From: Malacoraja senta
Taxonomy: Eukaryota
DNA: 64,000 nucleotides
Direction of reading: 5' to 3'
Assembly (NCBI GenBank): GCA_038087875.1
Contig: CM075985.1
Coordinates: 27,404,001-27,468,000, forward strand
How positions within the stretch are numbered: the first letter of the stretch is position 1; the number at the start of each line of letters is the position of its first letter. Both the position numbers and the translations under genes were made by a program. Shown in pieces: positions 1,178 to 64,000 of the stretch. Below the pieces are notes generated by a model, which did no database searches, had not been told where the DNA came from, and was given only the letters and a program-made list of their open reading frames with translations.

Positions 1178-1179
1178 AA

Positions 1180-29912: not shown

Positions 29913-30005
29913 GAATAAAGACCACAACTGTTCCATCTACAACACTGTTGACCACAACTCCACTTACATCAACTTCAACAATTTCTTCACCAATCACTAG
30001 CCCAG
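29913..30005 (+). CDS. First PTS exon (IKTTTVPSTTLLTTTPLTSTSTISSPITSP)
   Basis: aacag / gtaagg, 93 nt, phase 1-1. Confidence 0.85.
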
Positions 30006-31807
30006 GTAAGGTGATATTAGTTACAGGTTATGGCATGTAATATTTACAACATGGTAAGAACAGATTTCGAAAGATCAGAATTGAAACTGGACATTGGTAT
30101 GTCTGTACTTTTGGACATAAATGGGGTTCATAAGCAGGTTATCACTTTCCAACACGTTTCATGATGTTGACGATCAGTACCTTTAATCTGCATACTGCCC
30201 CTGGGTCTCAAAGAGATGACAAACATTGTGTAAAAAGGGCAAATGAGAGTCTCTCCTGGCTCCACAAGGCAAATGTATGATTCTGTCAAGTAGGTCTCAT
30301 CTCCATTCACATTCACAGCTCCTGCCTCATAGGAACAAGCCCAAAGCAACTGTAGGTGTAAGAGGCAATTTGTATGGATAAAGTCTGAGCTTTGGCTCAT
30401 GTTTTAAACTTGCTTGTGAAAAGCACATAAGGTCAGGGTTTCATGTTGCCAGCTTGGCTAAATGTTGATAAGAATAATGAATGTATATCGGGAACATCCT
30501 CACATAGAACAGTACAGCACAATAACAGGCCTTTTGATTCACACGATGCTCGGTTCAACTAATCTCCTCTGCCTGCAACTAATCTCTGCCTGCACAATTC
30601 ACCATTTTGTGGCTGGGCAATGTTTAGAGAGTGTGGTAGGTGTTGAGTGCCTGACCCACTGCTGAGGGTGGTGATGGAGGCAGATACAATTGTGGTGTTT
30701 AAGATTCTTTTGGATAGGCACCTGGATATGCAGGAAATGGAGGGTATGGATTATGTACTGGCAGATAAGGATTGGTCTTGGTATCATTGTTCAGCACAGA
30801 CATAGTGGGTTGATGGACCCGTACCTGTGCTGTATTGTTCTATGCTCTTTTTGAGTAAAATTGACAACCGAATATAATGTCTGTTTAATTATATTTAGCA
30901 ATTCTAAAACTGTTTTTTTTTTAAAGGGGTTAGTAAGATGGATTTTTCAGAAAGCATATTCAGAGAAATGTAAATTTTAGTTTTAAATATTCATCAGTTT
31001 TAACTTTGGGTTTTGTGTTATTTCAGTGGGGACCTACATTTCTGAGTGGCAGAAATCAGCCAATGCCCAGCCCCATCCACACTAGTACCACCTCTGCATT
31101 TGCCCATTTCCTTCTAAACCTATCCTATCTATGTACCTATCCAAATGTTTCTTAATATATTTTTTTAATTTTTACTTTTATTTGGGGTTTTTTAACTGTC
31201 AGTAACATCATCTCAGACTAATGCCATGACATTCTCCTTAATCAATAAGGCAACCCCTCTTCTACCATTTTGCTATTTTGGGAGAACTGCATGATTCTAT
31301 GACTAAATGTTGGATCTCAATGAAAATATGAAGTAAAACAGATGTGAGATCAAACTGGCTTTCTGCAATGTAAAGTTCATGAAATGATTTGTGATGCATG
31401 CCTTCTGTATACATTGTGGCCAATGATCTACCAGATACATACTAAAAAAGGGGTCCCAGGGTAATTGGCAAAAGAACCAAGGGCAAAATTAAAATATAAA
31501 TGACCTTAAACACAAATTTGCAATAATTTGGAATGTGCTGTTGGAAAGATATATTTTATGAGCAGATTCAAGTTTGCCTTTTAAAATGAAATTACAAAGT
31601 CTGATAATTACCTAAAACCTGCTGAATTTAATGTACTACCCAATGTCTTTGGTCTCCACTAATACCCTGACCCTTTAATCTGCAACAATGCTTAAATATA
31701 GTACCACTCGTGTGGCAACAGACGTTTATTTGCCTTGCTCGTACGCCACAATTTCTCGTCAGCAGTTCATGGGATGTTATCTCGTTTCAAAGACTTGATA
31801 TTCAAAC

Positions 31808-32085
31808 AGTGCAGCAACTGTAGGGTTGCTGCCTTACAATGCCAGAGACCCGGGTTCCATCCAGACAATGGGTGCAGTCTGTACGGAGATTGTACTTCCT
31901 CCCTGTGAGCGCATGGGTTTTCTCCTGGTGCTCCGATTTCCACTCCACTTTCCTAAGACTGCAGGTTAATTGGTTACTGTAAAAATTTCCCCTAGCTCAC
32001 AGAATAAAACTAGTGTATGGGGGATTGATGGACGTGCAGACTCGGTAGGCTGAAGGGCCTCTGTCTACGCTGTATATCTAAACCT
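31808..32085 (+). mobile_element. V-SINE-like SINE (another degenerate copy at ~29255-29480)
   Basis: Similar to 7826-8110. Confidence 0.7.
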
Positions 32086-32338
32086 ACACTAGAATGGTGC
32101 TTTGATACACCACAAAGGAAGGACAGTAATGCCCAAAGTAGGTCCAGAAGTCTAAGTTGAAACACATACAAATATTACCACTGAATGTAGTGTCGGTTGT
32201 AAATTTGCAGTGATTTGTTGACATTATTTTGCACAATCTATTTTAAGTTTATGCATTATATGCTGATTTTGTTACCACTCTCCCAAATGTGTCATTCTTC
32301 AAGTTGAATGTAAAGGCCGTGTATGCATTTGCTTACAG

Positions 32339-32407
32339 AAAAAACAACAACAACAACAACAACAACAGTGAGGACCACAACAGAATCTACCACCAGTCCC
32401 ACAACTG
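32339..32407 (+). CDS. PTS micro-exon (EKTTTTTTTTVRTTTESTTSPTT)
   Basis: tacag / gtgagt, 69 nt. Confidence 0.85.
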
Positions 32408-32632
32408 GTGAGTGATAACTTCTCGCAATGTACACTCATGGGGTTTTATATAACAGCTAAGCGCATATACATCACATACTTGTGTTCAGTAACAGGCCTT
32501 TCTCCTCCTTGCTTCAAGTCTTGCAATTTCTGCTCAGTAGCTCATGATCCCATTTCAGAATCATTATAGATGGTTCTCTGGTGTCGGATAGGAATAGTGC
32601 AGCACTGCCAAGACTGTGTTATTCTGCCATAG

Positions 32633-32687
32633 TTTTTTACAACTGTCCCCACGACTACAACTGAGTCTACCACCGGCCCCACAACTG
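32633..32687 (+). pseudogene. Truncated remnant resembling the 3' tail of a CysD exon
   Basis: Matches CysD-exon tail and donor context; nearest AG gives 55 nt, which would shift frame. Confidence 0.5.
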
Positions 32688-33081
32688 GTGAGTGACGCCT
32701 TCTCTCAGTACTTGTTAAAAGACATTTTAATGCAACTATGCTTAAATACAATACCACTTGCGAGTTGTAACTGCCTTGCTTTGTGCGCCATAATTTCACC
32801 TCAGCAGTTCATGAGATATCATCGCATTTCAAAGTCACCAGATCCAAACAAGAATGGAGATTTATTGCAGCACAAAGGAAAGCCAGTAATGCCTAATATA
32901 TGTCCCGCTTAATCTGGAGTTGAAACACTTACAAATATTACTGCTGAATGTAGTGTTGTAATGATATTGTTGATATTATATTTATTTTAATTTATACAAT
33001 GTATGCTGAGTTTGTTACTACTCTCTCAAGTGTGTTATTCTTCGAGTTGAATGTAAGAGCCGTGTATGCATTTGTTTACAG

Positions 33082-33135
33082 AAGAAACAACGACATCCAC
33101 AACCACAACAGAATCTACCACCTCTCCCACAACTG
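33082..33135 (+). CDS. PTS micro-exon with GC donor (EETTTSTTTTESTTSPTT)
   Basis: tacag / GCaagt, 54 nt. Confidence 0.6.
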
Positions 33136-34798: not shown

Positions 34799-34843
34799 AA
34801 GAAGCATCAACTGTGACATCAACCAGCATTCCTTCCACAACAG
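34799..34843 (+). CDS. PTS micro-exon type H (EEASTVTSTSIPSTT)
   Basis: tccag / gtaagt, 45 nt. Confidence 0.82.
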
Positions 34844-36789
34844 GTAAGTGTTGGCTTTTTCAATATATATTTATTTTGCAACCTCAACTCATCACAATGA
34901 AAATCCATTTGTTTTCTTCTCTACCTTTTTGGTATACTCTCACAGGAGGTTATTGTCAAACATATTAAGTACAAACTGTTGCAAATTCTTTTAATAGATA
35001 AATTGAAACAATTTTCTTTTACTAAAAGGTATTAAAATCAGCAGAGGTTTTTAATGTGGGTGGCACCTGCTGATTCTATCAAAATACAGTTCATGCTTCT
35101 TTCTAGGTGCCTGTGCTAATATTATTTAGATTGCCATTATATATGTCTATAATCAATTATTCCTGATGTATTTTGCTTCAAACTGATAAAGTTGCCCATT
35201 TGAGGAACTTCACAACAATCATTCATTAATTTGGTCCAGCTTTTGAATGCCTCCATTTTTCTTCAAAATAAATACTTACTGCAATGGCAGTATTGACAAC
35301 TCCATTACTTTTCTAAACCACAGTTGTAATTTCTCCATGGGCAAACATTGGCTCAGACCTTATCCGTTTTCCCCATTTTTAATTTTATAAGTAAAATGTT
35401 CGGTCGCATACGTGCACGATGCCTTACAATGCTATGTACGACAGTGATCGCAACTTCTACGTGTGGATGGCCATTGGCTCGCTAGGAGCTCATCTGCCCT
35501 TTGACAAGTCTTGTTTTTGGTCCTGCAGGGGGTTCACTGCCCACTCCTCACCTGGCAAATCAGGTGGGGGAGACGGTTTAGTCGCCGACTATCCGACCAT
35601 GGAGCAGGTAGCACGGGATTTCATGGTACCCGTGGCGGGGGGTAATCCCCCCTATCTTCTCTGCCATTTTGATATATTAGACCCTGTTCCCTGTTCCCTG
35701 TTCCCCATTTTTACTTTCATAAGTAAAATGTTCGGTCGCTCACAATGGCAGCTACTTTTAACATCATGCAGGAATTTGAACTCACTTCTTTATAAGAATA
35801 TGATAGGTAACTTCTTTATTTGGGCATGCGAGGAGGCTGTTTGGCCCATTGGGTCCTTTTCAACTTCCAACAGTACAATGTCATGTCCCCTGCTTATTTC
35901 CCTGTAACTCTACAACATATTCTCTCCCACATCCACTCTCCTTTGATTCTTTTGGTATTGGTCTATACAAAGGGATAATTTACAATAGCCAATTAATCTA
36001 CCAGTATGTCTCTGGGTGACAGGAGGAACCCAAGGAAGTACAGGGAGCCAATATAAGCTCCATAAAAACAGCACCTTATATCAGGATTGAACTTGGATCT
36101 CTCAAGCTTTCAGGCAAAGGCGAGGCACAGCCTTCCACAGCTTATTGAGAGTGGTCTTCTTTTCATTATAATCTCTTTCCTGCTTTAACTCTTGGTTCTG
36201 TTTTATGAATTGACAGCAAACGTGTTCCTTTATCATATATTATCCTGGAGCAGCTACCATTTTGCCATTTCCCTCTTGCCCACCAATTAATCTCTTTCTG
36301 CATATATGGTATATATTTTCGCCATATACAGTAGGTAGCATGTTTAAAGGTAATATGGTGAGGCAGCGCAACTACTCCAATAATGTTCTTCAATAGCATG
36401 CTGAGGCCAACCCATCAAAGTGGAAAGAATATCTGGCTGTTAAAATCATGCAATTGTTAGTGCACAGCTGCAGTCAGCTGCCTGATAAGTGACATCTCAC
36501 ATTTGTGCTTTATGCTTTTTCCCCATTGTTCTGTTCTGCACTGGCAATGACTGTTTCCCTATCTGATACTTGAGGTTGTATCTCAATTCAGATCAATCAA
36601 CAGTTCCCCAAACATATTGTTATTATTCCCATTTTACTGTTCCCATTTTCATTTAAACTGTAATTTGGAAGATTCATTTTGATGCACAACCATGTTTCTC
36701 AAATCTTGTTTTTTATATTTATGTTTAGTTTTTCCACTTTGTATTGTTTTATACAAGTTTGCCTTATGTTTTCTTTCTTTACATTACAG

Positions 36790-37131
36790 GCCCATTCTGT
36801 TTGGGTGTATGGTCTCCTTGGTCTAATGAACATACACCAAAACCGTCATCTCCAAATGATTATGAATTGTTGAAACCATATGGCACTAAATTGTGCCCAT
36901 CTTCTTCTGATAAAATTACTAATATTCAGTGCCAATTTGCCGACCATCCTCAATGGCCACTAAGTTTATCGCCAGATCTTGTGACCTGCAATAAAGTCAT
37001 AGGATTGATCTGCAAGTTCTCTGGATATCCTTTAGGCCAATTTTGTAGTGACTACAGAATTAGAGTTTGCTGCGAGCCAACTGAGACTACAACTGTCCCC
37101 ACGATTACAACTACCACCAGTCCCACGATTG
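36790..37131 (+). CDS. CysD (WxxW) exon plus Thr tail, unit 1
   Basis: tacag / gtgagt, 342 nt, phase 1-1; WSPW...DYE...CSDYRIRVCC. Confidence 0.92.
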
Positions 37132-37398
37132 GTGAGTGATACCTTCTCCAGTACTTGTTAACAGTCATTTTAAAGGAAGGACAACAATGTCCAAAGTATG
37201 TCCAGCTTGTGCTGGAATTGAACCAAATACAAATGTTACTGCTGAATGTCGCGATGATTATAAATTTGCAGTGACTTGTGTTGAAGTTATTCCACAACAT
37301 CGTTTAATTTATGCAATATATGCTGATTTTGTTACTATTCTCCCAAATGTGCCTTTCTTGAAGTTGGATATAAAGAACATGTATGCATTTGTTTACAG

Positions 37399-37458
37399 AA
37401 GAAACAACAACAACAACAGCCACGACCACCACAGAATCTACCACCAGTCCGACAACTG
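37399..37458 (+). CDS. PTS micro-exon A1, unit 1
   Basis: tacag / gtaagt, 60 nt. Confidence 0.85.
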
Positions 37459-37590
37459 GTAAGTGATAACTTCTCTCAATGTACACTCATGTTTTTTTGT
37501 TATCACAGCTGAGCTCATACACTCATGTTCCCATCCTTGCTTCAAGTTTCGCAATTTCATGATCCCATTTTAGAGTCTGTGGGTTCAGTC

Positions 37591-38340
37591 CACTATCCAC
37601 TCTACTAGTTACATCCTCGAAAAATTCTATAAGATTCGTCAGACATGATTTACCTTTCGTAAATCCATGCTGACTTTGTCCAATGATTTCACCACTTTTC
37701 AAATGTGCTGCTATCCCATCTTTAATAACTGACTCTAACAGTTTCCCCACTACCGATGTTAGACTAACTGGTCTGTAATTCCCCGTTTTCTCTCTCCCTC
37801 CCTTTTTAAAAAGTGGATTTACATTAGCTACTCTCCAATCCTCAGGAACTACTCCAGAATCTAAAGAGTTTTGAAAAATTATCACTAATGCATCCACTAT
37901 TTCTGGAGCTACTTCCTTAAGTACTCTGGGATGCAGCCTATCTGGCCCTGGGGATTTATCGGCCTTTAATCCATTCAATTTACCTAACACCACTTGGCGG
38001 CTCACCTGGATTTCACTCAGTTCCTCCATCTCCTTTGACCCGCGGTCCCCTGCTATTTCCGGCAGATTATTTATGTCTTCCTTAGTGAAGACGGAACCAA
38101 AGTACTTATTCAATTGGTCCGCCATGTCCTTGTTCCCCATGATCAATTCACCTGTTTCTGACTGCAAGGGACCTACATTTGTTTTAACTAATCTCTTTCT
38201 CTTCACATATCTATAAAAACTTTTGCAGTCAGTTTTAATGTTCCCTGCCAGTTTTCTTTTATAATCTTTTTTCCCTTTCCTAATTAAGCCCTTTGTCCTC
38301 CTCTGCTGGTCTCTGAATTTCTCCCATTCCTCTGGTCGAC
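37591..38340 (-). mobile_element. Internal CR1 ORF2 fragment (copies at ~44636-45385 and ~51666-52415)
   Basis: Stop-free KSPGPD...GNYRPVSLTS...QHGF...SCLTNL; lacks both ends of the element. Confidence 0.93.
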
Positions 38341-38498
38341 TGCTGAATGTCGCGATGATTATAAATTTGCAGTGACTTGTGTTGAAGTTATTCCAAAACA
38401 TCTTTAATTTATGCAATATATGCTGATTTTGTAACTACACTCCCAAATGTGCCTTTCTTCAAGTTGAATATTAAGGACATGTATGCATTTGTTTACAG

Positions 38499-38567
38499 AA
38501 GAAACAACAACAACAACAACAACAACACCCACGACCACCACAGAATCTACCACCAGTCTGACAACTG
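38499..38567 (+). CDS. PTS micro-exon A2, unit 1
   Basis: tacag / gtaagt, 69 nt. Confidence 0.82.
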
Positions 38568-39148
38568 GTAAGTGATAACTTCTCTCAATGTACACTCATG
38601 TTTTTTTTTTATCACAGCTGAGCTCATACACTCATGTTCCCATCCTTGCTTCAAGTTCCGCAATTTCATGATTCCATTTTAGAGTCTGTGGGTTCAGTCT
38701 TGATGGTCCTCTGATGCAGGATAGAGATAGTGCAGCACTGACAATACTGTGCTATTCTGCTTGAGACTTTGAGCTGGGTTTGTGAGTGTGCTGTCGTGAC
38801 TGCGGTTTATCTTGTGGCCAATAGCAAAGAACAGAAAAATCTCTCCACTACCATGAATAATAACGATAATTACAACAACATTTCTCAGGAAATATTTTCA
38901 AGCTCTATAGTTTATACGATGAAGATATGAATAAGTAGTTTATGATGTTCCCTACATTTCAGCTGTGACCATATTTTAGTACAATTTCTTGCTGTAAGTC
39001 CTTTGCAAGATAGGAAGTAATTAAAGCAGTTTATCTCCACTTTACACAATCTCTTTTGAAATAGTCCAATTACCTGCATTTGTTGGTCATTCAAAATCTA
39101 CGATTCAACATGGATGATTTAATTGTCCATGAATTTGTTTCTCTTTAG

Positions 39149-39202
39149 AAGAAACATCTACAACAACTAGCACAACTGAGTCCACAACCACTTTCACAAC
39201 TG
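39149..39202 (+). CDS. PTS micro-exon B, unit 1
   Basis: tttag / gtgggt, 54 nt. Confidence 0.8.
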
Positions 39203-39293
39203 GTGGGTGGTGATATTTTCATTTGCAAATCTTTTTAACACAAGCTCCCCTATACATATACATATATCACATAATTCAAAACAAATGTAATGC

Positions 39294-39506
39294 TTTGGCA
39301 GACAAAAATGCTGGAGAAACTCAGCGGGTGCAGCAGCATCTATGGAGCGAAGGAAATAGGCAATGTTTCGTGCCGAAACGGGTCTGAAGAAGGGTTCGGC
39401 CTGAAACATTGCCTATTTCCTTCGCTCCATAGATGCTGCTGCACCCACTGAGTTTCTCCAGCATTTTTGTATATCTTCGATTTTCCAGCATCTACAGTTT
39501 CTTCTT
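39294..39506. mobile_element. Penelope-type hairpin element with 15-bp TSD (copies at ~46339-46551 and ~53372-53584)
   Basis: ~70-bp inverted arms; aaacaaatgtaatgc at 39279-39293 and 39507-39521; empty site in units 4 and 5. Confidence 0.8.
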
Positions 39507-39537
39507 AAACAAATGTAATGCCTTTATTATTTTCCAG

Positions 39538-39588
39538 AAGAAACAACTCCCACGGTGACACCAAGCACCACCATCACCTACACAACAG
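39538..39588 (+). CDS. PTS micro-exon C, unit 1
   Basis: tccag / gtgagt, 51 nt. Confidence 0.83.
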
Positions 39589-39709
39589 GTGAGTGATCAC
39601 CTCTGTCAGTAGGTTATTACCAGCCGTTACGTTCAGTCATTCAATTTCAACTTCCGCTTGCCCTCAGTTGAATCATTCTTCAAGTTGCATGTGATGCTTT
39701 CATTTGCAG

Positions 39710-39769
39710 AAAAAACAACAACAACAACAGAGCCAACCACAAACGAGTCTACCACCAGCCCCACAACTG
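39710..39769 (+). CDS. PTS micro-exon D, unit 1 (contains N-E-S sequon)
   Basis: tgcag / gtgagt, 60 nt. Confidence 0.83.
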
Positions 39770-40171
39770 GTGAGTAATGCCTTTTATCAATCATTTTAAC
39801 ACAAATATGGTCAAATACATTACCACTCGCAGGTTGTGACAATGTTGATCACTCTTGCCTTGTGCAACACAATTTTACCTCAGCAGCTCATGTGATGTTA
39901 TCGAATTTCAAAGTCTTGAGATTCAAACAAGAATGGTGCTTTAATGCAATGCAAAGGAATGACAGTAATGCCCAAAGTATGTGCTGTAGTTGAAACACGT
40001 ACAAATATTACTGCTGAATATAGTATGGATTGTATATTTGCAGTGATTATGTTGAAATATTATTCCACAACTTCTTTTAATTTGTGCAATATATGTTCAT
40101 TTTGTTACTCCTCTCTCAAATGTGTAATTCTTCAAGTTGAATGTAAAGGCCGTGTATGTATGTGTTTACAG

Positions 40172-40228
40172 AAAAAACTACAACAACAGCGACAACAACA
40201 ACAGAATCTACCACCAGTCCCACAACTG
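40172..40228 (+). CDS. PTS micro-exon E, unit 1
   Basis: tacag / gtgagt, 57 nt. Confidence 0.83.
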
Positions 40229-42250: not shown

Positions 42251-42302
42251 TTAATTCTCATAATTAATATATACTACAGTAAATATGTTTGTTATTTTCC
42301 AG

Positions 42303-42347
42303 AAGAAACATCAACTGTGACATCAACCAGCATTCCTTCCACAACAG
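42303..42347 (+). CDS. PTS micro-exon H, unit 1
   Basis: tccag / gtaact, 45 nt. Confidence 0.78.
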
Positions 42348-42427
42348 GTAACTGTTGGCTTTTTCAATATATATTTAATTTGCAACCTCAACTGATCACA
42401 ATGAAAATCCATTTGTTTTCTTCTCTA

Positions 42428-52573: not shown

Positions 52574-52645
52574 AAGAAACAACAACAACAACAACAACAA
52601 CAACACCCACGACCACCACAGAATCTACCACCAGTCCGACAACTG
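52574..52645 (+). CDS. PTS micro-exon A2, unit 3 (one extra ACA codon)
   Basis: AG/GT, 72 nt. Confidence 0.82.
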
Positions 52646-53226: not shown

Positions 53227-53280
53227 AAGAAACATCTACAACAACTAGCACAACTGAGTCCACAACCACTTTCACAACTG
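53227..53280 (+). CDS. PTS micro-exon B, unit 3
   Basis: AG/GT, 54 nt. Confidence 0.8.
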
Positions 53281-53615
53281 GTGGGTGGTGATATTTTCAT
53301 TTGCAAATCTTTTTAACACAAGCTCCCCTATACATATACATATATCACATAATTCAAAACAAATGTAATGCTTTGGCAGACAAAAATGCTGGAGAAACTC
53401 AGCGGGTGCAGCAGCATCTATGGAGCGAAGGAAATAGGCAATGTTTCGTGCCGAAACGGGTCTGAAGAAGGGTTCGGCCTGAAACATTGCCTATTTCCTT
53501 CGCTCCATAGATGCTGCTGCACCCCCTGAGTTTCTCCAGCATTTTTGTATATCTTCGATTTTCCAGCATCTACAGTTTCTTCTTAAACAAATGTAATGCC
53601 TTTATTATTTTCCAG

Positions 53616-53666
53616 AAGAAACAACTCCCACAGTGACACCAAGCACCACCATCACCTACACAACAG
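53616..53666 (+). CDS. PTS micro-exon C, unit 3
   Basis: AG/GT, 51 nt. Confidence 0.83.
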
Positions 53667-53787
53667 GTGAGTGATCACCTCTGTCAGTAGGTTATTACCA
53701 GCCGTTACGTTCAGTCATTCAATTTCAACTTCCGCTTGCCCTCAGTTGAATCATTCTTCAAGTTGCATGTGATGCTTTCATTTGCAG

Positions 53788-53847
53788 AAAAAACAACAAC
53801 AACAACAGAGCCAACCACAAACAAGGCTACCACCCGCCCCACAACTG
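53788..53847 (+). CDS. PTS micro-exon D, unit 3, weakened donor (possibly skipped)
   Basis: 60 nt; donor is GTGTAA instead of GTGAGT. Confidence 0.45.
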
Positions 53848-54061
53848 GTGTAATGTCTTTTATCAATCATTTTAACACAAATATGCTCAAATACAGTATA
53901 TATTTGAATATAGTATGGATTGTATATTTGCAGTGATTATGTTGAAATATTATTCCACAACTTCTTTTAATTTGTGCAATATATGTTCATTTTGTTACTC
54001 CTCTCTCAAATGTGTAATTCTTCAAGTTGAATGTAAAGGCCGTGTATGTATGTGTTTACAG

Positions 54062-54118
54062 AAAAAACTACAACAACAGCGACAACAACAACAGAATCTA
54101 CCACCAGTCCCACAACTG
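54062..54118 (+). CDS. PTS micro-exon E, unit 3
   Basis: AG/GT, 57 nt. Confidence 0.83.
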
Positions 54119-56192
54119 GTGAGTGATAACTACTCTCAATGTAAACCCAGGGGTTTTTATATCACAGCTAAGCTCATAAACATCATTTTCAGTTGCACTC
54201 CTTTCCCCTCCTTTCTTCAATTTCACTTCCTCCATAACAGGTGAGTGATCGCCTCTGTCAGTATGTACTTACTGGCTGTTGGGTTTGGTTGTTCAATTAA
54301 AACTTCCACTCATCTTCAGTAAAAGTCTAATAATTTGACCTTTCCACTACTATTTCCAATAACAAGCATTGGTTTAAATATTGAATGAAGGGTCCTGAAA
54401 TTTATTTCTGCAGACAATTATTAGAATCCTCTTCTTTAAATGATGGCTACCATGATGATCAGCCAGCTTGAGTGAGATGGAGTAAAGCATCTCTCATGGG
54501 TAATTAACCTAGGTAATTCATAATAAAAGTGCAATGGTAGGCTTTTTAGTGATTGCCATAAATAAGTGGGTACACCATACTGAAATGCATTGAGGTCTTG
54601 CGAGGGAATGAAAACTGAGAATAAATCGTGCAGGACTATACTATTTTGTTGCTGCTGCATCTCCACTCGTGATGGTTCTGCAGAGAAGAAAATAATTTTT
54701 CCATGTCTAAATTGTTTTCACATTTCTCAATAATTTCTCAGCATTACACTTGAAAGTTCCAAGTGATCAACAGTATGTTAAATGCAGTTAACCCTCTTGC
54801 TCACAAAATGATGTTCTTTTGAAAGTAGAGTTTACTTGTGATGCAGATAAATCACCCAGCAAATTTTATTGAGGTCTTGCGAGGGAATGAAAACTGAGAA
54901 TAAATCGTATGGTTATAATTTTGAAGCCATTTGCTGAAATTATTTTACACAATCATTTATCGGGTTAATTTTCTACTGCCTCAGTTGTGCCATTCATCAA
55001 GTTGAATGGTCATGAATGCTTTTATTTACTTGAGAAATAATAACAGAGTCAACTATAACTGCGTTTACCACCAGTCACATAACTGGTGGGTGATGCCTTC
55101 ATTCAATATTAATTCATGGATATTTTAACGCAACTATCCTTTTAAGCACTGTAAGCTTGAACTTTATTGGCTTGCCACAATCGTTTCAATTTCAGCGCAG
55201 TAGAGTTCTATCCTTCTCCAGAACCTTAAGGGTTCACTCGAGGTTGGTGATATGATACAGAACAGATCAAAGATATCTCCTTCGTTAACATTCGGAATTA
55301 TTTCTGTATCGAGCACCAAAGATACCTTTTCAGATCATTTACCTTTAACAAATTTTTTTTAATTGAAATTATTTAAGGTTTTAATTTGCAAGAGAAAGTT
55401 TTGATGAGACTTCATAACCAGAGGTTTTAAAGTTCAAGTTTACATTTATTGTCACATGCGCCAATTGGTACAGTGAAATTTGGGTTGCCATACAGCCATA
55501 TGAATAAAAAAGGAACACAACACACGATAGAATTTAACATAGACATCCCCACACAGCAGAATCAACATTTCCCACTGTGAGGGAAGGCAATAAAGTTGAG
55601 CCATCTTCCTCTTTGTTCACCCGTGGTTGGGGCCCCCGATGTTCAGGCCCTACCGGAGACCGCGGCTCCCGAAGTCCACAGGCCGTGCTGGGCGGAGATT
55701 CCCACTGGCGCCCTCGGCAAAGGGACCACCAGGCCTCCGCGATGTTGTTCAGCACCGCCCACGGCTAGAAGCTCCGCAACCACAAATCTACGATGTTAAA
55801 ACAGCAGGTCCAACACTCCAGAGCTTCAACAAACGATCCCCAGTAAGGCACAGCCCGCTCCGCGGTGTTAATTCAGTGCTGCGTCGCTGTTGCAGCTCTG
55901 GTCGGCTGCCGGCAGGAAAGGCCATGCCAATCCAGTTGGTAGGCCGCGAGGAGGGGGCAAAGATGCGACTCGGAGAATAGTCGCATCCTCAACAGGAAGA
56001 GACTGAGAAACGGTTTCCCCCTTTACCCTGCTCCCTTCTCCCACATAATAAGACGAAGAAAACCTCCAAAACATACTTTTAAACAGACAAAAAATAACAT
56101 AAAGATGAAAAAAAACATACAGACTTCAAATTGCGCCCCATTAATTCTCATAATTAATATATACTACAGTAAATATGTTTGTTATTTTCCAG

Positions 56193-56237
56193 AAGAAACA
56201 TCAACTGTGACATCAACCAGCATTTCTTCCACAACAG
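56193..56237 (+). CDS. PTS micro-exon H, unit 3
   Basis: AG/GT, 45 nt. Confidence 0.78.
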
Positions 56238-57720
56238 GTAACTGTTGGCTTTTTCAAAATATATTTAATTTGCAACCTCAACTGATCACAATGAAAATCC
56301 ATTTGTTTTCTTCTCTATCATCATCATCATCATCGTTGAAAACATCAACGTGCACGATGCCTTACAATGCTATGTACGACAGTGATCGCAACTTCTACGT
56401 GTGGATGGCCGTTGGCTCGCTAGGAGCTCATCTGCCCTTTGACAGGTCTTGTTTTTGGTCCTGCAGAGGGTTCACTGCCCACTCCTCACCTGGCAAATCA
56501 GGTGGGGGAGACGGTTTAGTCGCCGACTATCCGTCCATGGAGCAGGTAGCATGGGATTTCATGGTACCCGTGGCGGGGGGGGTAAACCCCCCTATCTTCT
56601 CTGCCATTTTGATATATTAGACCCTGTTCCCTGTTCCCTGTTCCCCATTTTTACTTTCATAAGTAAAATGTTCGGTCGCTCACAATGGCAGCTACTTTTA
56701 ACATCATGTGGGAATTTGAACTCACTTCTTTATAAGAATATGATAGGTAACTTCTTTATTTGGGCATGCGAGGAGGCTGTTTGGCCCATTGGGTCCTTTT
56801 CAACTTCCAACAGTACAATGTCATGTCCCCTGCTTATTTCCCTGTAACTCTACAACATATTCTCTCCCACATCTACTCTCCTTTGATTCTTTTGGTATTG
56901 GTCTATACAAAGGGATAATTTACAATAGCCAATTAATCTACCAGTATGTCTCTGGGTGACAGGAGGAACCCAAGGAAGTCAATATAAGTTCCATACAAAC
57001 AGCACCTAATATCAGGATTGAACTTGGATCTCTCAAGCGTTCAGGCAAAGGCGAGGCACAGCCTTCCACAGCTTATTGAGAGTGGTCTTCTTTTCATTAT
57101 AATCTCTTTCCTGCTTTAACTCTTGGTTCTGTTTAATGAATTGACAGCAAACGTGTTCCTTTATCATATAATATCCTGGAGCAGCTACCTTTTTGCCATT
57201 TCCCTCTTGCCCACCAATTAATCTCTTCTGCATATATGGTATATCTTTTTACCATATATAGTACGTAGCATGTTTAAAGGTGATATGGTGATTCAGAGCA
57301 ACTACTCCAATAATGTTCTTCAATAGCACGCTGAGACCTGCCCATCAAAGTGGAAAGAATATCCAGCTGTTAAAATCATGCAATAGTTAGTGCACAGCTG
57401 CAGTCAGCTGCCTGATAAGTGACATCTCATGTTTGTGCTTTATGCTTTTTCCCCATTGTTCTGTTCTGCGCTGGCAATTGCTGTTTCCCTATCTGATACT
57501 TGAGGTTGTATATTAATTCAGATCAATCAACAGTTCCCCAAACATATTGTTATTATTCCCGTTTTACTGTTCCCATTTTCATTTAAACTGTAATTTGGAA
57601 GATTCATTTTGATGCACAACCATGTTTCTCAAATCTTGTTTTTTATATTTATGTTTAGATTTTCCACTTTGTATTGTTTTATACAAGTTTGCCTTATGTT
57701 TTCTTTCTTTTCCATTACAG

Positions 57721-58068
57721 TGCCAGTCTGTTCAGGTGTATGGTCCCATTGGCAGAATAAACATAAACCATCATCTTCATCTCCGGATGATTATGAATTG
57801 TTGAAAACATATGGCCCTACAATTTGCCCATCTTCTTCCGATGAAATTACTAATATTCAGTGCCAATTTGCCGACCATCCTCAATGGCCACTAAGTGTAT
57901 CGCCAGATCCTGTGATCTGCAATATAGACATAGGATTGATCTGCAAGTTCTCTGGATATCCTTATGGCCACTTTTGTAGTGACTACAGAATTAGAGTTTG
58001 CTGTGAGCCAACTGAGCCTACAACTGTCCCCACGACTACAACTGAGTTTACAACCAGTCCCACAACTG
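57721..58068 (+). CDS. CysD exon, unit 4 (type B, WSHW)
   Basis: tacag / gtgagt, 348 nt. Confidence 0.92.
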
Positions 58069-58320
58069 GTGAGTACTTGTGAATGGTCATTTTAAAGGAA
58101 GGACAACAATGTCCAAAGTATGTCCAGCTTGTGCTGGAATTGAACCACATGCAAATGTTACTGCTGAATGTCGCGATGATTATAAATTTGCAGTGGCTTT
58201 TGTTCAAGTTATTCCACAACTTCTTTTAATTTATGTAATATATGCTGATTTTGTTACTACTCTCTCAAATGTGCCTTTCTTCAAGTTGAATATAAAGGAC
58301 ATGTATGCATTTGTTTACAG

Positions 58321-58383
58321 AAGAAACAACAACAACAACAACAGCCACGACCACAACAGAATCTATCACCAGTCCTACAACTG
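58321..58383 (+). CDS. PTS micro-exon A, unit 4
   Basis: AG/GT, 63 nt. Confidence 0.84.
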
Positions 58384-58661
58384 GTAAGTGATAACCTCTC
58401 TCAATGTACACTCATGTGGGTTTTTTTTTATCACAGCTGAGCTCATACACTCATGTTCCCATCCTTGCTTCAAGTTTTGCAATTTCATGATCCCATTTCA
58501 GAGTCTATGTGTTCAGTCTCGATGGTCCTCTGATACAGGATAGTGATAGTGCAGCACTGACAAATACTGTGCTATTCTGCAAATCTTTTTACAAAAGCTC
58601 CCCATTACACATACATATTATTTTTATTCAAAACAAATGTAATGCCTTTATTATTTTCCAG

Positions 58662-58702
58662 AAGAAACAACTCCCACGTTGCCAACAAGCACCACCATAT
58701 GA
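58662..58702 (+). pseudogene. Broken type C exon: acceptor intact, 3' end deleted, runs into TGA
   Basis: EETTPTLPTSTTI-stop fused to downstream intron sequence. Confidence 0.7.
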
Positions 58703-59571
58703 CACAGAACAGATCAAAGATATCTCCTTCGTTAACATTCAGAATTATTTCTGTGTCAAGCACCAAAGATATCTTTTCAGATCATTTACCTTTGTTAACA
58801 AATTTAAAAAATTGAAATTATTTAAGGTTATAAGTTGCAAGAGAAGGTTTTGATGAGATTTCATAACCAGAAGTTTTGTAAATGTTATCATACAACTGAA
58901 ATCTGAGACACCATATTGGAGAGAGTTTAAAGACCAAATGTAATATACAAAACCAGCTGATTATCTGAAACAGTTAAATTTACTCTTAGGTCCTAAAGCC
59001 ATAGGCGTAGTTGGAAGATGAGGCACTGTCACTTACACTGAGTACTAAACTTTATTGGAACTGTGTTGGAGATACAAAGTGGAAATGTAGGGAACATTTA
59101 AATGACAGACACTTTAATTCTCATAATTAATATATACTACAGTAAATCTGTTTTGGTCTCCACTCTGCTGTGGACCTTCCCTTCCCTTTTCTTGTATACT
59201 CACTGCCTTTCCTGATTATTGTTTAGATTTTATTTGTTGCTTTGCAGTAACACTTTTTCCAGACATACCCCTTGTTCTTTCTTCTCCTTTGCTTCCATCT
59301 TTCAGTCACCATTTGGGTCACTCAATCTCTCCTGATCTCCAGCCCGTCACATCATCCCCTATTTTTCTGCACCGTAAATATTTTTTAATTCTAAATTTTC
59401 CAGTACTTATAAAATAGAATCAGTCTCAAATGTTAATTCTTAACAGATGCTGCTTGACCTACCAAGTACTTCCAGTCATTTCTGCTTTCATTTTTCTTGT
59501 GTCTGAAATCTGCTTGAGTGGTATAAGAATTGAGTTGACTTTGTGATTTGAATTTGTTTGTTATTTTCCAG

Positions 59572-59616
59572 AAGAAACATCAACTGTGACATCAACCAGC
59601 ATTCCTTCCACAACAG
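59572..59616 (+). CDS. PTS micro-exon H, unit 4
   Basis: tccag / gtaagt, 45 nt. Confidence 0.82.
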
Positions 59617-60484
59617 GTAAGTGTTGGCTTTTTCAATACATATTTATTTTGCAACCTCAACTGATCACAATGAAAATCCATTTGTTTTCTTCTCTATCTT
59701 CATCATCATCATCGTTGAAAACATCAATGTGCACGGTGCCTTACAATGCTATGTACGACAGTGATCGTAACTTCTCCTGAAGTGTGGATGGCCGTTGGCT
59801 CGCTAGGAGCTCTTCCGCCCTTTGACAGGTCTTGTTTTTGGTCCTGCAGGGGTTCACAGCCCCCTCCTCACCTGGCAAATCAGGTGGGGGAGACGGTTTA
59901 GTCTCCGACTGTCCGACCATGGAGCAGGTAGCACGGGATTACATGGTACCCGTGGCGGGGGGAACTCCCCCCGATTTTCTCTACCTTTTTTGTATATTAG
60001 ACCCTGTTCCCTGTTCCCCATTTTGATTTTGATAAGTAAAATCTTTACACAATCTCTTTTGAAATAGTCCAATTACCGTCTGCATTTGTTGGTCATTCAA
60101 AATCTACGATTCAACATGGATGATTTAATTGTCCATGAATCATGCAATAGTTAGTGCACAGCTGCAGTCAGCTGCCTGATAAGTGACATCTCATGTTTGT
60201 GCTTTATGCTTTTTCCCCATTGTTCTGTTCTGCACTGGCAATTGCTGTTTCCCTATCTGATACTTGAGGTTGTATCTTAATTCAGATCAATCAACAGTTC
60301 CCCAAACATATTGTTATTATTCCCATTTTACTGTTCCCATTTTCATTTAAACTGTAATTTGGAAGATTCATTTTGATGCACAACCATGTTTCTAAAATCT
60401 TGTTTTTTACAGTTATGTTTATATTTTCCACTTTGTATTGTTTTATACAAGTTTGCCTTATGTTTTCTTTCTTTTCCATTACAG

Positions 60485-60832
60485 TGCCAGTCTGTTCAGG
60501 TGTATGGTCTCATTGGCATAATAAACATAAACCATCATCTTCATCTCCAGATGATTATGAATTGTTGAAAACATATGGCCCTACAATTTGCCCATCTTCT
60601 ACCGATGAAATTACTAATATTCAGTGCCAATTTGCCGACCATCCTCAATGGCCACTAAGTGTATCGCCAGATCTTGTGATCTGCAATAAAGACATAGGAT
60701 TGATCTGCGAGTTCTCTGGATATCCTTTTGGCCACTTTTGTAGTGACTACAGAATTAGAGTTTGCTGTGAGCCAACTGAGACTACAACTGTCCCCACGAC
60801 TACAACTGAGTCTACAACCAGTCCCACAACTG
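60485..60832 (+). CDS. CysD exon, unit 5 (type B)
   Basis: tacag / gtgagt, 348 nt. Confidence 0.92.
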
Positions 60833-61084
60833 GTGAGTACTTGTGAACGGTCATTTTAAAGGAAGGACAACAATGTCCAAAGTATGTCCAGCTTGTGCTG
60901 GAATTGAACCACATGCAAATGTTACTGCTCAATGTCGCGATGATTATAAATTTGCAGTGGCTTTTGTTCAAGTTATTCCACAACTTCTTTTAATTTATGT
61001 AATATATGCTGATTTTGTTACTACTCTCTCAAATGTGCCTTTCTTCAAGTTGAATATAAAGGACATGTATGCATTTGTTTACAG

Positions 61085-61153
61085 AAGAAACAACAACAAC
61101 AACAACAACAACAGCCACGACCACAACAGAATCTACCACCAGTCCTACAACTG
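61085..61153 (+). CDS. PTS micro-exon A, unit 5
   Basis: AG/GT, 69 nt. Confidence 0.84.
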
Positions 61154-61731
61154 GTAAGTGATAACCTCTCTCAATGTACACTCATGTGGGGGTTTTTTAA
61201 TCACAGCTGAGCTCATACACTCATGTTCCCATCCTTGCTTCAAGTTTTGCAATTTCATGATCCCATTTCAGAGTCTATGTGTTCAGTCTCGATGGTCCTC
61301 TGATACAGGATAGTGATAGTGCAGCACTGACAAATACTGTGCTATTCTGCTTGAGATTTTGAGCTGGGTTAGTGAGTGTGCTGTCGTGACTGCAGATTAT
61401 CTTGTGCCCAATGGCACCGAACAGAAAAATCTCTCCACTACCATGAATAATAACGATAATTACAACAAAATTTCTCAGAAAATATTTTTAAGCTTTATAG
61501 TTTATACGGTGAAGATATGAATAAGTAGGTTATTCATTTCAGCTGTGACCATAATTTAGTACAATTTCTGGCTGTAAATCCTTTGCAAGATAGGAAGTAA
61601 TTAAAGGAGTTTATCTCCACTTTACACAATCTCTTTTGAAATAGTCCAATTACCGTCTGCATTTGTTGGTCGTTCAAAATCTACGATTCAACATGGATGA
61701 TTTAATTGTCCATGAATTTGTTTCTCTTTAG

Positions 61732-61785
61732 AAGAAACATCTACAACAACCAGCACAACTGAGTCCACTACCACTTCCACAACTG
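61732..61785 (+). CDS. PTS micro-exon B, unit 5
   Basis: AG/GT, 54 nt. Confidence 0.8.
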
Positions 61786-61890
61786 GTGGGTGGTGATATT
61801 TTCATTTGCAAATCTTTTTACAAAAGCTCCCCTATACACATACATATTATTTTTATTCAAAACAAATGTAATGCCTTTATTATTTTCCAG

Positions 61891-61941
61891 AAGAAACAAC
61901 TCCCACGTTGCCAACAAGCACCACCACCACCTACACAACAG
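61891..61941 (+). CDS. PTS micro-exon C, unit 5
   Basis: AG/GT, 51 nt. Confidence 0.83.
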
Positions 61942-62062
61942 GTGAGTGATCACCTCTGTCAGTAGGTTATTACCAGCCTTTACGTTCAGTCATTCAATTT
62001 CAACTTCCGCTTGCCATCAGTTGAATCATTCTTCAAGTTGCATGTGATGCCTTTATTTGCAG

Positions 62063-62116
62063 AAAAAACAACAACAGAGCCAACCACAACCACGTCTACC
62101 ACCAGCCCCACAACTG
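62063..62116 (+). CDS. PTS micro-exon D, unit 5
   Basis: AG/GT, 54 nt. Confidence 0.83.
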
Positions 62117-62513
62117 GTGAGTAATGCCTTTTATCAGTCATTTTAACGCAAATATGCTCAAATACAGTACCACTCGCAGGTTGTGACAATGTTGATCACT
62201 CTTGCCATGTGCAACACAATTTTACCTCAGCATCTCATGGGATGTTATCGAATTTCAAAGTCTTGAGATTCAAACTAGAATGGTGCTTTAATGCAATGCA
62301 AAGGAATGACAGTAATGCCCAAAGTATGTGCTGGTGGAAACACATACAAATATTACTGCTGAATGTAGTTTGGATTGTATATTTACTGTAATTATGTTGA
62401 AATATTATTGCACAACTTTTAATTTGTGTAATATATGTTCATTTTGTTACTACTCTCTCAAATGTGTAATTCTTCAAGTTGAATGTAAAGGCTGTGTATG
62501 TATGTGTTTACAG

Positions 62514-62570
62514 AAAAAACGACAACAACAGCGACAACAACAACAGAATCTACCACCAGTCCCACAACTG
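62514..62570 (+). CDS. PTS micro-exon E, unit 5
   Basis: AG/GT, 57 nt. Confidence 0.83.
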
Positions 62571-64000
62571 GTGAGTGATAACTACTCTCAATGTAAACCC
62601 AGGGGTTTTTATATCACAGCTAAGCTCATAAACATCATTTTCAGTTGCACTCCTTTCCCCTCCTTTCTTCAATTTCACTTCATCCATAACAGGTGAGTGA
62701 TCGCCTCTGTCAGTATGTACTTACTGGCTGTTGGGTTTGGTTGTTCAATTAAAACTTCCACTCATCTTCAGTAAAAGTCTAATAATTTCCAATAACAAGC
62801 ATTGGTCTAAATATTGAATGAAGGGTCCTGAAATTTATTTCTGCAGACAATTATTAGAATCCTCTTCTTTAAATGATGGCTACCATGATGATCAGCCAGC
62901 TTGAGTGAGATGGAGTAAAGCATCTCTCATGGGTAATTAACCTAGGTAATTCATAATAAAAGTGCAATGGTAGGCTTTTTAGTGATTGCCATAAATAAGT
63001 GGGTACACCATACTGAAATGCATTGAGGTCTTGCGAGGGAATGAAAACTGAGAATAAATCGTGCAGGACTATACTATTTTGTTGCTGCTGCATCTCCACT
63101 CGTGATGGTTCTGCAGAGAAGAAAATAATGTTTCCATGTCTAAATTGTTTTCACATTTCTCAATAATTTCTCAGCATTACACTTGAAAGTTCCAAGTGAT
63201 CAACAGTATGTTAAATGCAGTTAACCCTCTTGCTCACAAAATGATGTTCTTTTGAAAGTAGAGTTTACTTGTGATGCAGATAAATCACCCAGCAAATTTT
63301 ATTGAGGTCTTGCGAGGGAATGAAAACTGAGAATAAATCGTATGGTTATAATTTTGAAGCCATTTGCTGAAATTATTTTACACAATCATTTATCGGGTTA
63401 ATTTTCTACTGCCTCAGTTGTGCCATTCATCAAGTTGAATGGTCATGAATGCTTTTACTTACTTGAGAAATAATAACAGAGTCAACTATAACTGCGTTTA
63501 CCACCAGTCACATAACTGGTGGGTGATGCCTTCATTCAATATTAATTCATGGATATTTTAACGCAACTATCCTTTTAAGCACTGTAAGCTTGAACTTTAT
63601 TGGCTTGCCACAATCGTTTCAATTTCAGCGCAGTAGAGTTCTATCCTTCTCCAGAACCTTAAGGGTTCACTCGAGGTTGGTGATATGATACAGAACAGAT
63701 CAAAGATATCTCCTTCGTTAACATTCGGAATTATTTCTGTATCGAGCACCAAAGATACCTTTTCAGATCATTTACCTTTAACAAATTTTTTTTAATTGAA
63801 ATTATTTAAGGTTTTAATTTGCAAGAGAAAGTTTTGATGAGACTTCATAACCAGAGGTTTTAAAGTTCAAGTTTACATTTATTGTCACATGCGCCAATTG
63901 GTACAGTGAAATTTGGGTTGCCATACAGCCATATGAATAAAAAAGGAACACAACACACGATAGAATTTAACATAGACATCCCCACACAGCAGAATCAAGC

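What the first reader, a model, noticed from the sequence alone, without database searches (positions are those of the whole stretch)
29913..63518. Mucin PTS domain encoded as a cassette library of symmetrical micro-exons interleaved with CysD exons
Seen: about 32 Thr-rich exons of 45-93 nt and 5 CysD exons. All are multiples of 3 and phase 1-1, and nearly all PTS exons start G|AA so the junction makes Glu. Known: MUC2, MUC5AC and MUC5B keep most PTS and CysD sequence in one huge exon, while MUC19 and frog FIM-B.1 use many small exons. Inference: any subset of exons can be skipped, duplicated or lost in frame. One gene could therefore tune glycosylated spacer length and CysD number by splicing and by copy number.
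Basis: partly seen in the sequence, partly recalled or inferred. Interest (0 to 1): 0.8.

Follow-up and report, generated by a model that had tools for sequence, protein, structure and literature searches.

The report
Skate MUC19-type mucin micro-exon array
This is the sugar-carrying middle of a skate or ray mucus-protein gene of the MUC19 family, written as 32 tiny frame-compatible exons and 5 CysD exons that multiplied as 7-kb genomic repeats; the layout is real but already known, and mix-and-match splicing is not shown.

Summary
On the + strand, 29913-62570 holds 32 Thr-rich exons of 45-93 nt and 5 CysD exons of 342-348 nt. All are multiples of 3 and phase 1-1. 31 of the 32 start AA, and all 37 end in G. 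Joined, they give 1189 codons with no stop.

The exons are not 37 independent cassettes. They form three ~7045-bp genomic units that are 99.3-99.8% identical, introns included, plus two shorter diverged units.

Spliced RNA contigs from a related species join the exons at the predicted GT..AG sites. RefSeq models from a sister skate and a sawfish use the same layout.

By D3 phylogeny the gene belongs to the MUC19 clade, not MUC2/MUC5. A mammalian MUC19 also has phase 1-1 micro-exons after D3, and the bichir MUC19 ortholog has a CysD. The design is therefore ancestral and already known.

In-frame gain and loss by copy number is well supported. Tuning by combinatorial splicing is possible by arithmetic but not shown. 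This scan found the same kind of array several times elsewhere in this genome.

Verdict: new member of a known kind, modest interest.

The parts
4142..28010 (+). Upstream exons of the same gene: C8 and TIL (end of D1), VWD-C8-TIL (D2), TIL' and VWD-C8-TIL (D3). The last one (about 27977-28010) ends in phase 1.
   Evidence: Pfam VWD/C8/TIL hits on ORF translations; tblastn against P0010; junction read
29913..30005 (+). First PTS exon (type P), 93 nt, cag|GA...CAG|gtaagg
   Evidence: same peptide at the same place in the Rhinoraja model P0169
32339..32407 (+). PTS exon type A, 69 nt
   Evidence: not present between P and G in the P0169 model, so its use is uncertain
32633..32687 (+). 5'-truncated relic of a CysD exon tail, 55 nt, out of phase; probably not an exon
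   Evidence: resembles the 3' end of the CysD exons
33082..33135 (+). PTS exon type A, 54 nt, with GC donor (CTG|gcaagt)
   Evidence: use uncertain
34799..34843 (+). PTS exon type G, 45 nt
35410..42454 (+). Genomic unit U1 (7045 bp): CysD exon, 7 PTS exons and introns carrying high-copy repeats
   Evidence: self-blastn; MAFFT of the units
36790..37131 (+). CysD exon 1, 342 nt, phase 1-1, with a PTS tail
   Evidence: PF13330 E=3.6e-13; RNA joints 42347>36792/36797
37399..37458 (+). PTS exon A, 60 nt
   Evidence: donor used in RNA joints 37457>39151
38499..38567 (+). PTS exon A', 69 nt, a duplicate of A across a high-copy repeat
39149..39202 (+). PTS exon B, 54 nt; RNA uses the distal AAG acceptor at 39152
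39538..39588 (+). PTS exon C, 51 nt; RNA uses the acceptor at 39541
39710..39769 (+). PTS exon D, 60 nt
40172..40228 (+). PTS exon E, 57 nt
   Evidence: RNA joints 39768>40171 and 40227>42302; same peptide in P0169
41157..41195 (+). Doubtful exon type F (39 nt, or 51 nt from 41145)
   Evidence: weak acceptor; zero depth and skipped in RNA; absent from P0169
42303..42347 (+). PTS exon G, 45 nt
   Evidence: RNA joints into 42303 and from 42347 to the CysD exon
42455..49499 (+). Genomic unit U2 (7045 bp), 13 substitutions and no indels against U1
43835..44176 (+). CysD exon 2, 342 nt
44444..44503 (+). PTS exon A, 60 nt
45544..45612 (+). PTS exon A', 69 nt
46194..46247 (+). PTS exon B, 54 nt
46583..46633 (+). 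PTS exon C, 51 nt
46755..46814 (+). PTS exon D, 60 nt
47217..47273 (+). PTS exon E, 57 nt
48202..48240 (+). Doubtful exon type F
   Evidence: copy of 41157-41195
49348..49392 (+). PTS exon G, 45 nt
49500..56347 (+). Genomic unit U3 (6848 bp), 99.3% identical to U1/U2, with intron deletions of 15 and about 186 bp
50865..51206 (+). CysD exon 3, 342 nt
51474..51533 (+). PTS exon A, 60 nt
52574..52645 (+). PTS exon A', 72 nt (one more ACA codon)
53227..53280 (+). PTS exon B, 54 nt
53616..53666 (+). PTS exon C, 51 nt
53788..53847 (+). PTS exon D, 60 nt, with a weakened donor (CTG|gtgtaa) next to the intron deletion
54062..54118 (+). PTS exon E, 57 nt
55047..55085 (+). Doubtful exon type F
   Evidence: copy of 41157-41195
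56193..56237 (+). PTS exon G, 45 nt
56348..59550 (+). Short diverged unit U4 (CysD, A, G), 91-96% identical to U1-U3
57721..58068 (+). CysD exon 4, 348 nt
   Evidence: PF13330 E=4.8e-13; borders
58321..58383 (+). PTS exon A, 63 nt
59572..59616 (+). PTS exon G, 45 nt
59551..64000 (+). Unit U5, cut off by the end of the window; the array goes on beyond it
60485..60832 (+). CysD exon 5, 348 nt
61085..61153 (+). PTS exon A, 69 nt
61732..61785 (+). PTS exon B, 54 nt
61891..61941 (+). PTS exon C, 51 nt
62063..62116 (+). PTS exon D, 54 nt
62514..62570 (+). PTS exon E, 57 nt
63480..63518 (+).
   Evidence: copy of 41157-41195

Best explanation
The region is the central mucin domain of a secreted gel-forming mucin of the MUC19 clade in a skate or ray. 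After D1-D2-D'-D3, the protein alternates CysD domains with O-glycosylated Thr-rich rods of about 130 residues. In the DNA each rod is split into 7 micro-exons of 15-24 codons, and each CysD is one 342-348-nt exon. Every exon is phase 1-1, ends in G and (for PTS exons) starts AA. This layout is inherited from the ancestral MUC19-type gene. It makes every unequal crossover between exon-plus-intron modules frame-neutral. The array has therefore grown at three scales: ACA-codon slippage within exons, ~350-bp exon-plus-intron modules, and ~7-kb super-units, of which three copies are almost identical. Copy number of the 7-kb unit is therefore likely to vary between individuals. Shown here: the exon structure, the splicing at the predicted sites in a related species, the hierarchical duplication and the MUC19 kinship. 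Inferred: the exons are by default all included, with small heterogeneity of one Glu at NAGNAG acceptors. Exon skipping, if it happens, is tolerated noise rather than a regulated code.
For: Exon table and open 1189-codon chain. CysD Pfam hits. VWD/C8/TIL exons upstream. Unit identities of 99.82% and 99.3% with equal divergence in exons and introns. Module alignment showing (ACA)n length variants. GT..AG joints in RNA contigs of run X5 at 37458, 39152, 39541, 39769>40172, 40228>42303 and 42347>36790. The sister-skate model P0169 (D3 88.7% identical) has the same exon types in the order E, G, CysD. The sawfish gene L001 has 60-nt ag|AA...G|gt PTS exons and separate CysD exons. In the D3 tree the window falls with MUC19 (SH-aLRT 100), apart from MUC5/MUC2. 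Hyena MUC19 has 33-48-nt phase 1-1 S/T-rich exons after D3. The bichir MUC19-like gene lies next to LRRK2 and has a CysD.
Against: No RNA from the source species was available, so inclusion of each exon in this genome is inferred from relatives. The near-identity of U1-U3 could not be checked against raw long reads. The X5 contigs also show non-adjacent joints (37457>39540, 39768>42302, 40228>36797), and RefSeq lists up to 39 isoforms for relatives. Real exon skipping is therefore not excluded.
Confidence: 0.85

Rival explanations
1. Regulated combinatorial splicing: cells choose subsets of PTS and CysD exons, so one gene makes mucins of different spacer length and CysD valency.
For: All exons are symmetrical, so any skip is in frame. 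Non-adjacent joints occur in RNA contigs of a relative. Bichir MUC19-like isoforms X1-X3 differ by exactly one 12-residue and one 13-residue PTS unit. Relatives have many RefSeq isoforms. Published precedents or proposals exist for chicken Muc13, chicken MUC2, FIM-C.1 and SmPoMuc (PMC1552070, PMC3549977, PMC7177656, PMC2576457).
Against: The joints have only 21-30 nt on the shorter side, and exon types A, A', D and E share nearly the same 3' end. The RNA is from another species, whose unit make-up is unknown. Isoform models across 99%-identical units are prone to mis-joined reads; the catshark isoforms differ by blocks of 426-443 residues. Splice sites of the 37 exons are canonical and fairly strong. 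No tissue-specific data exist.
Confidence: 0.12
2. Assembly artefact: the three near-identical 7-kb units are one or two real units over-expanded by the assembler, or a collapse of many more, so the exon count is not real.
For: 13 substitutions in 7045 bp between U1 and U2 and no indels; such repeats are hard to assemble.
Against: U3 carries its own 15-bp and about 186-bp deletions, a 3-bp codon gain and about 47 substitutions. U4 and U5 are clearly different units. DNA runs of organism F hold 0.82-0.97 of the sampled words. Relatives have the same repeated protein architecture.
Confidence: 0.08
3. Decaying or unexpressed paralog: one of many tandem mucin genes in this genome whose array is no longer used.
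For: The scan notes list several similar arrays 1.8-2.5 Mb away. There are four dead F-type exons, a truncated CysD relic and one GC donor. No RNA of the source species is available.
Against: 1189 codons run across 37 exons without a stop and with intact splice sites. The N-terminal exons are intact. Spliced RNA at about 95% identity exists in a relative, and there is an orthologous gene model in a sister skate.
Confidence: 0.05

Closest known systems
MUC19 (mammals; checked on Hyaena hyaena mucin-19, P0270/L002)
   Same: The D3 domain groups with MUC19 in the tree. The S/T-rich region directly after D3 is split into 33-48-nt phase 1-1 exons ending G|gt.
   Different: Human MUC19 also has a ~12-kb VNTR exon (PMC10557577). 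No CysD was found by Pfam in the two mammalian MUC19 models scanned, which are partial. D3 identity is only 53-55%.
Chondrichthyan RefSeq models: Rhinoraja longicauda 'mucin-6-like' (P0169), Pristis pectinata 'mucin-2-like' XP_051890192.1 (P0019, locus L001), Hypanus sabinus 'mucin-2-like' XP_059842765.1 (P0010)
   Same: They share the same N-terminus (D3 identity 88.7%, 67% and 76%), the same ag|AA...G|gt micro-exons and the same separate CysD exons. P0169 has the same exon peptides.
   Different: The automatic names (mucin-2, -5AC, -6, -19-like) are inconsistent. Unit make-up and number differ. The Pristis exons are a uniform 60 nt with 2-7-kb introns and no near-identical super-units.
Polypterus senegalus mucin-19-like (P0155, next to LRRK2)
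   Same: It is a MUC19 ortholog by synteny, with Thr-rich units starting with Glu followed by a CysD. Its isoforms differ by whole units.
   Different: The model has one CysD and no DNA could be fetched, so its exon borders are untested.
Human MUC5AC / MUC5B / MUC2
   Same: The protein plan is the same: D1-D3, then CysD domains alternating with PTS stretches in super-repeats.
   Different: In these genes the whole mucin domain is one exon (PMC9712336). The D3 here is only 44-48% identical to the MUC5/MUC2 group and falls in another clade.
Chicken MUC2 and chicken Muc13
   Same: Chicken MUC2 has PTS repeats spread over exons 32-45 with interspersed CysD, and one in-frame alternative splice in the PTS (PMC3549977). 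Chicken Muc13 has one repeat per exon, and length control by splicing was already proposed for it (PMC1552070).
   Different: They belong to other mucin families. The chicken MUC2 repeat is 69 residues, and Muc13 is membrane-bound.
Schistosoma mansoni SmPoMuc and Xenopus FIM mucins
   Same: In SmPoMuc the repeats are ~1-kb genomic units, each with a 27-bp exon, and transcripts vary by splicing (PMC2576457). FIM-C.1 is described as polymorphic through alternative splicing (PMC7177656).
   Different: These proteins are unrelated. In those systems the variation was shown on cDNA of single individuals; here it was not.

Membership tests
Gel-forming (VWD-type) mucin | N-terminal VWD-C8-TIL assemblies (D1-D2-D'-D3) | tested here: met
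   Pfam VWD, C8 and TIL hits on exons from 4115 to 25355; 60% identity over 1131 residues to P0010. The window starts inside D1.
Gel-forming (VWD-type) mucin | Pro/Thr/Ser-rich central domain | tested here: met
   T 36%, S 12% and P 9% over the 1189-residue exon chain
Gel-forming (VWD-type) mucin | C-terminal VWC/CK dimerisation part and signal peptide | not testable with these tools
   Both lie outside the window. Relatives P0010 and P0019 have a D4-like VWD and a cystine-knot end (read from their sequences).
CysD (Mucin2_WxxW) domain | Match to PF13330 over its full length | tested here: met
   E 3.6e-13 and 4.8e-13, profile positions 1-88 of 88
MUC19 clade | D3 groups with MUC19 rather than MUC2/MUC5 | tested here: met
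   IQ-TREE, 62 rows: the branch joining the chondrichthyan group with mammalian and ray-finned MUC19 has SH-aLRT 100; the MUC5/MUC2 group is separate at 98. This was a quick search on D3 only. MUC6 and VWF were not labelled in the tree.
MUC19 clade | Synteny with LRRK2 | not testable with these tools
   No LRRK2 in the window. It was seen for the bichir gene.
MUC19 clade | Post-D3 region in many small symmetrical exons | tested here: met
   Window, sawfish, hyena MUC19
Combinatorial cassette-exon systems (SmPoMuc, FIM-C.1 type) | All cassettes symmetrical, so that any subset stays in frame | tested here: met
Combinatorial cassette-exon systems (SmPoMuc, FIM-C.1 type) | Different exon combinations in transcripts of one individual | tested here: inconclusive
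   Only contigs from a related species could be laid, and their sides are short and ambiguous. RefSeq isoforms of relatives are ambiguous.

The most novel reading that the evidence does not exclude
The symmetrical micro-exons and CysD exons are used as a regulated cassette set. Tissues such as skin, gill or gut would include different subsets, giving one MUC19-type gene a range of rod lengths and cross-link valencies, on top of a copy-number polymorphism of the 7-kb unit.
Probability: 0.12. Interest if true: 0.6.

Novelty: new member of a known kind. Interest (0 to 1): 0.3.

Why it matters
It is a clean, fully resolved example of how a gel-forming mucin can lengthen its glycosylated core by duplicating exon-plus-intron modules instead of expanding one giant exon. 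Together with the bichir and hyena comparisons, it suggests that the ancestral jawed-vertebrate MUC19 had phase 1-1 micro-exons and CysD domains, and that mammals later lost the CysD. It also warns annotators about three things: automatic names for these shark and ray genes (mucin-2, -5AC, -6, -19-like) are unreliable; isoform counts across 99%-identical units are suspect; and some candidate micro-exons are dead. It does not open a new mechanism.

Tried and rejected
1. RNA runs X1-X3 held only high-copy intronic repeats (37594-38330 and 39296-39510) and gave no exon evidence. Only X5 was informative.

2. A second run search with the CysD exon alone showed that no RNA run holds more than 0.15 of its words, so RNA of the source species is not available.

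3. I first took the gene for MUC2/MUC5 type, because of the CysD domains and the RefSeq names. Identity ranking and the D3 tree rejected this.

4. I considered the multiple-of-3 exon lengths as evidence of selection on frame. I set this aside because the length variants are (ACA)n slippage, which gives multiples of 3 anyway.

5. I considered the RefSeq isoform numbers of relatives as proof of alternative splicing, but kept them only as a hint.

6. DNA for the Hypanus, Mustelus, Cetorhinus, Chiloscyllium and Polypterus genes could not be fetched, because the gene range exceeded 100 kb or the file was too large.

7. The MUC19 cloning paper PMC3175562 is not held. The statement that human MUC19 has well over 100 exons therefore rests on my own knowledge. 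The hyena locus was used as a direct check instead.

8. The PDB sequence search could not separate the mucin families.

9. The 299-codon ORF at 42053-42949, which runs through exon G, has no Pfam match. It is intronic repeat sequence read through by chance.

Full report
**What is there**

The window has no N runs. Thr-rich open stretches occur only on the + strand, from about 29.9 kb to the end of the window.

Enumerating AG...GT-bounded, stop-free segments in phase 1-1 and tabulating them gives:
- 32 Thr-rich exons of 45-93 nt;
- 5 exons of 342-348 nt that match Pfam PF13330 (Mucin2_WxxW, the CysD domain) over the whole profile, at E about 4e-13.

Every length is a multiple of 3. 31 of the 32 PTS exons begin AA. 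All 37 exons end in G, so each junction reads GAA (Glu). The exceptions are the junctions into CysD exons, which read Gly or Val.

Joined in genomic order, the 37 exons give 1189 codons without a stop (T 36%, S 12%, P 9%, E 8%). The preceding exon (about 27977-28010) leaves phase 1, so the chain is continuous with the D3 end.

**Corrections to the observation**

- Dead candidates. Four further candidates (ends 41195, 48240, 55085, 63518; 39 or 51 nt) have a poor acceptor and a degenerate peptide. They had zero depth and were skipped in the only RNA run that covered the other exons. They are absent from the sister-skate gene model, where E joins G directly. I count them as dead exons.
- Other imperfect sites. 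A 55-nt relic of a CysD exon tail sits at 32633-32687, out of phase. Exon 33082-33135 has a GC donor.
- NAGNAG acceptors. 22 of the 36 PTS candidates carry a tandem CAG|AAG acceptor. The RNA contigs use the distal site at 39152 and 39541 and the proximal one at 42303.

**The exons are not independent**

Self-comparison and alignment of the units show three tandem genomic units of about 7045 bp: 35410-42454, 42455-49499 and 49500-56347.
- U1 and U2 differ by 13 substitutions and no indel (99.82% identical).
- U3 is 99.3% identical and carries its own deletions of 15 and about 186 bp, plus one extra ACA codon.
- Divergence is the same in exons and introns, so the duplication or homogenisation is very recent.
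- Two shorter, diverged units follow: 56348-59550 with CysD, A and G, and 59551 to the window end. The array continues beyond the window.

Inside the units, exon types A, A' and E and the two U0 exons belong to ~350-bp exon-plus-intron modules that are about 80-94% identical. These differ mainly by (ACA)n copy number. Types B, C, D and G share the same first seven and last six bases. Most PTS exons therefore probably descend from one ancestral exon, and the uniform phase and G|AA start are inherited.

The introns carry high-copy repeats at 37594-38330 and 39296-39510, seen at enormous depth in runs of several organisms.

**Evidence that the exons are used**

- Which runs hold the DNA. The DNA runs of organism F hold 0.82-0.97 of the sampled words. 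RNA runs hold only 0.06-0.15. No RNA of the source species is available, and the RNA evidence comes from relatives.
- Spliced contigs. In run X5 (organism B), contigs about 95% identical to the window join exon to exon with GT..AG ends at the predicted borders: 37458>39152, 39769>40172, 40228>42303, 42347>36790, and others.
- Sister skate. The D3 region is 88.7% identical to a Rhinoraja longicauda model, P0169. Its central part reads: P exon, G type, CysD, five PTS exons (the last two of types E and G), CysD, and so on.
- Sawfish. Mapping the Pristis pectinata protein P0019 exactly onto its 94-kb gene (L001) shows 60-nt exons of the form ag|AA...G|gt, one with a GC donor, and separate CysD exons.
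- Gene sizes. The genes are very large for their products: 110 kb for the 2506-residue Hypanus protein, 229 kb for the 3182-residue Mustelus protein and 159 kb for the 4340-residue Cetorhinus protein. This fits the same split layout.

**Which mucin it is**

Upstream exons encode C8, TIL and VWD domains of D1 to D3.

An exhaustive protein search with a D3 exon returned cartilaginous-fish proteins with inconsistent automatic names (mucin-2, -5AC, -6 and -19-like). Next came MUC19 of mammals, bichir, paddlefish and killifish. MUC5/MUC2 proteins came only after those.

In a D3 tree of 62 rows the window is sister to a stingray protein. The chondrichthyan group joins the MUC19 group on a branch with SH-aLRT 100, apart from MUC5/MUC2 at 98. 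This was a quick search, and MUC6 and VWF were not labelled.

The bichir mucin-19-like gene lies beside LRRK2, as human MUC19 does (the human arrangement is from my own knowledge). It has a CysD at E 1e-13.

A hyena MUC19 locus has 33-48-nt phase 1-1 S/T-rich exons straight after D3.

The micro-exon layout is therefore a trait of the MUC19 family, and the CysD is probably ancestral to it.

**How it works**

Shown:
- a polymerising mucin whose rod is a chain of CysD domains and short glycosylated spacers;
- every coding module is symmetrical;
- expansion happened by tandem duplication at three scales.

Inferred:
- unequal crossover between 99.8%-identical units makes copy number variable between individuals;
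- splicing is by default constitutive, with heterogeneity of plus or minus one Glu at NAGNAG sites.

**The combinatorial reading**

It is allowed by arithmetic and has hints in its favour.
- X5 shows non-adjacent joints: 37457>39540, 39768>42302 and 40228>36797. However, the shorter side is only 21-30 nt. Types A, A', D and E share almost the same 3' end, and the RNA is from another species.
- Bichir isoforms X1-X3 differ by exactly one 12-residue and one 13-residue unit.
- RefSeq lists up to 39 isoforms for catshark relatives. These differ by blocks of 9, 89, 426 and 443 residues. That is also what reads mis-joined between near-identical units would produce.

I put regulated combinatorial use at about 0.12.

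**What is already known**

- Human MUC2, MUC5AC, MUC5B and MUC6 have the mucin domain in one exon (PMC9712336).
- Multi-exon PTS domains were described for chicken Muc13, with the explicit proposal that splicing could set PTS length (PMC1552070).
- In chicken MUC2 the repeats span exons 32-45, with four CysD domains and one in-frame splice variant (PMC3549977).
- In SmPoMuc the repeats are ~1-kb units, each with a 27-bp exon (PMC2576457).
- FIM-C.1 is reported as polymorphic through alternative splicing (PMC7177656).
- Lang et al. 2016 counted three Muc19 paralogs in the elephant shark (PMC4948705).

Earlier notes of this scan report the same kind of array several times, 1.8-2.5 Mb away in this genome, with the same verdict. 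I treated these notes as leads and tested the main points myself.

**Verdict**

This is a new member of a known kind, with interest 0.3.

Noticed in passing
window 37396-37401, 39146-39151, 39535-39540, 42300-42305 and their copies: Tandem CAG|AAG (NAGNAG) acceptors at 22 of the 36 PTS exon candidates. RNA contigs of a relative use the distal site at exons B and C and the proximal one at exon G, so the protein may vary by single Glu residues.
   Followed up: partly
window 33135-33141: GC donor (CTG|gcaagt) on an otherwise intact A-type exon. The sawfish gene L001 also has one GC donor, at 41923.
   Followed up: partly
window 32633-32687: 5'-truncated copy of the PTS tail of a CysD exon with an intact donor but the wrong phase. 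It is a relic of an older unit in the first, irregular part of the array.
   Followed up: partly
window 53845-53905: In unit U3 a 2-bp and an approximately 186-bp deletion directly after exon D change its donor from gtgagt to gtgtaa. This copy of exon D may be spliced less well than its twins.
   Followed up: no
window 37594-38330 and 39296-39510: Intronic high-copy repeats with word depths of 10^4 to 10^6 in runs of several organisms.
   Followed up: partly
window 42053-42949, 49098-49994, 55943-56617, 35395-35904: A 170-299-codon open frame that runs through exon G and the repeat-rich intron after it. It has no Pfam match and is probably a chance reading of an interspersed repeat.
   Followed up: partly
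window 1-3700, 9800-10650, 18378-18796: Scattered direct and inverted copies, 74-82% identical, of interspersed repeats in the introns of the N-terminal part.
   Followed up: no
P0199, P0197, P0196 (Scyliorhinus canicula isoforms): RefSeq gives this catshark relative at least 39 isoforms, which differ by blocks of up to 443 residues in the PTS/CysD region. Either large-scale exon skipping is real there, or the models are artefacts of repeat units.
   Followed up: partly
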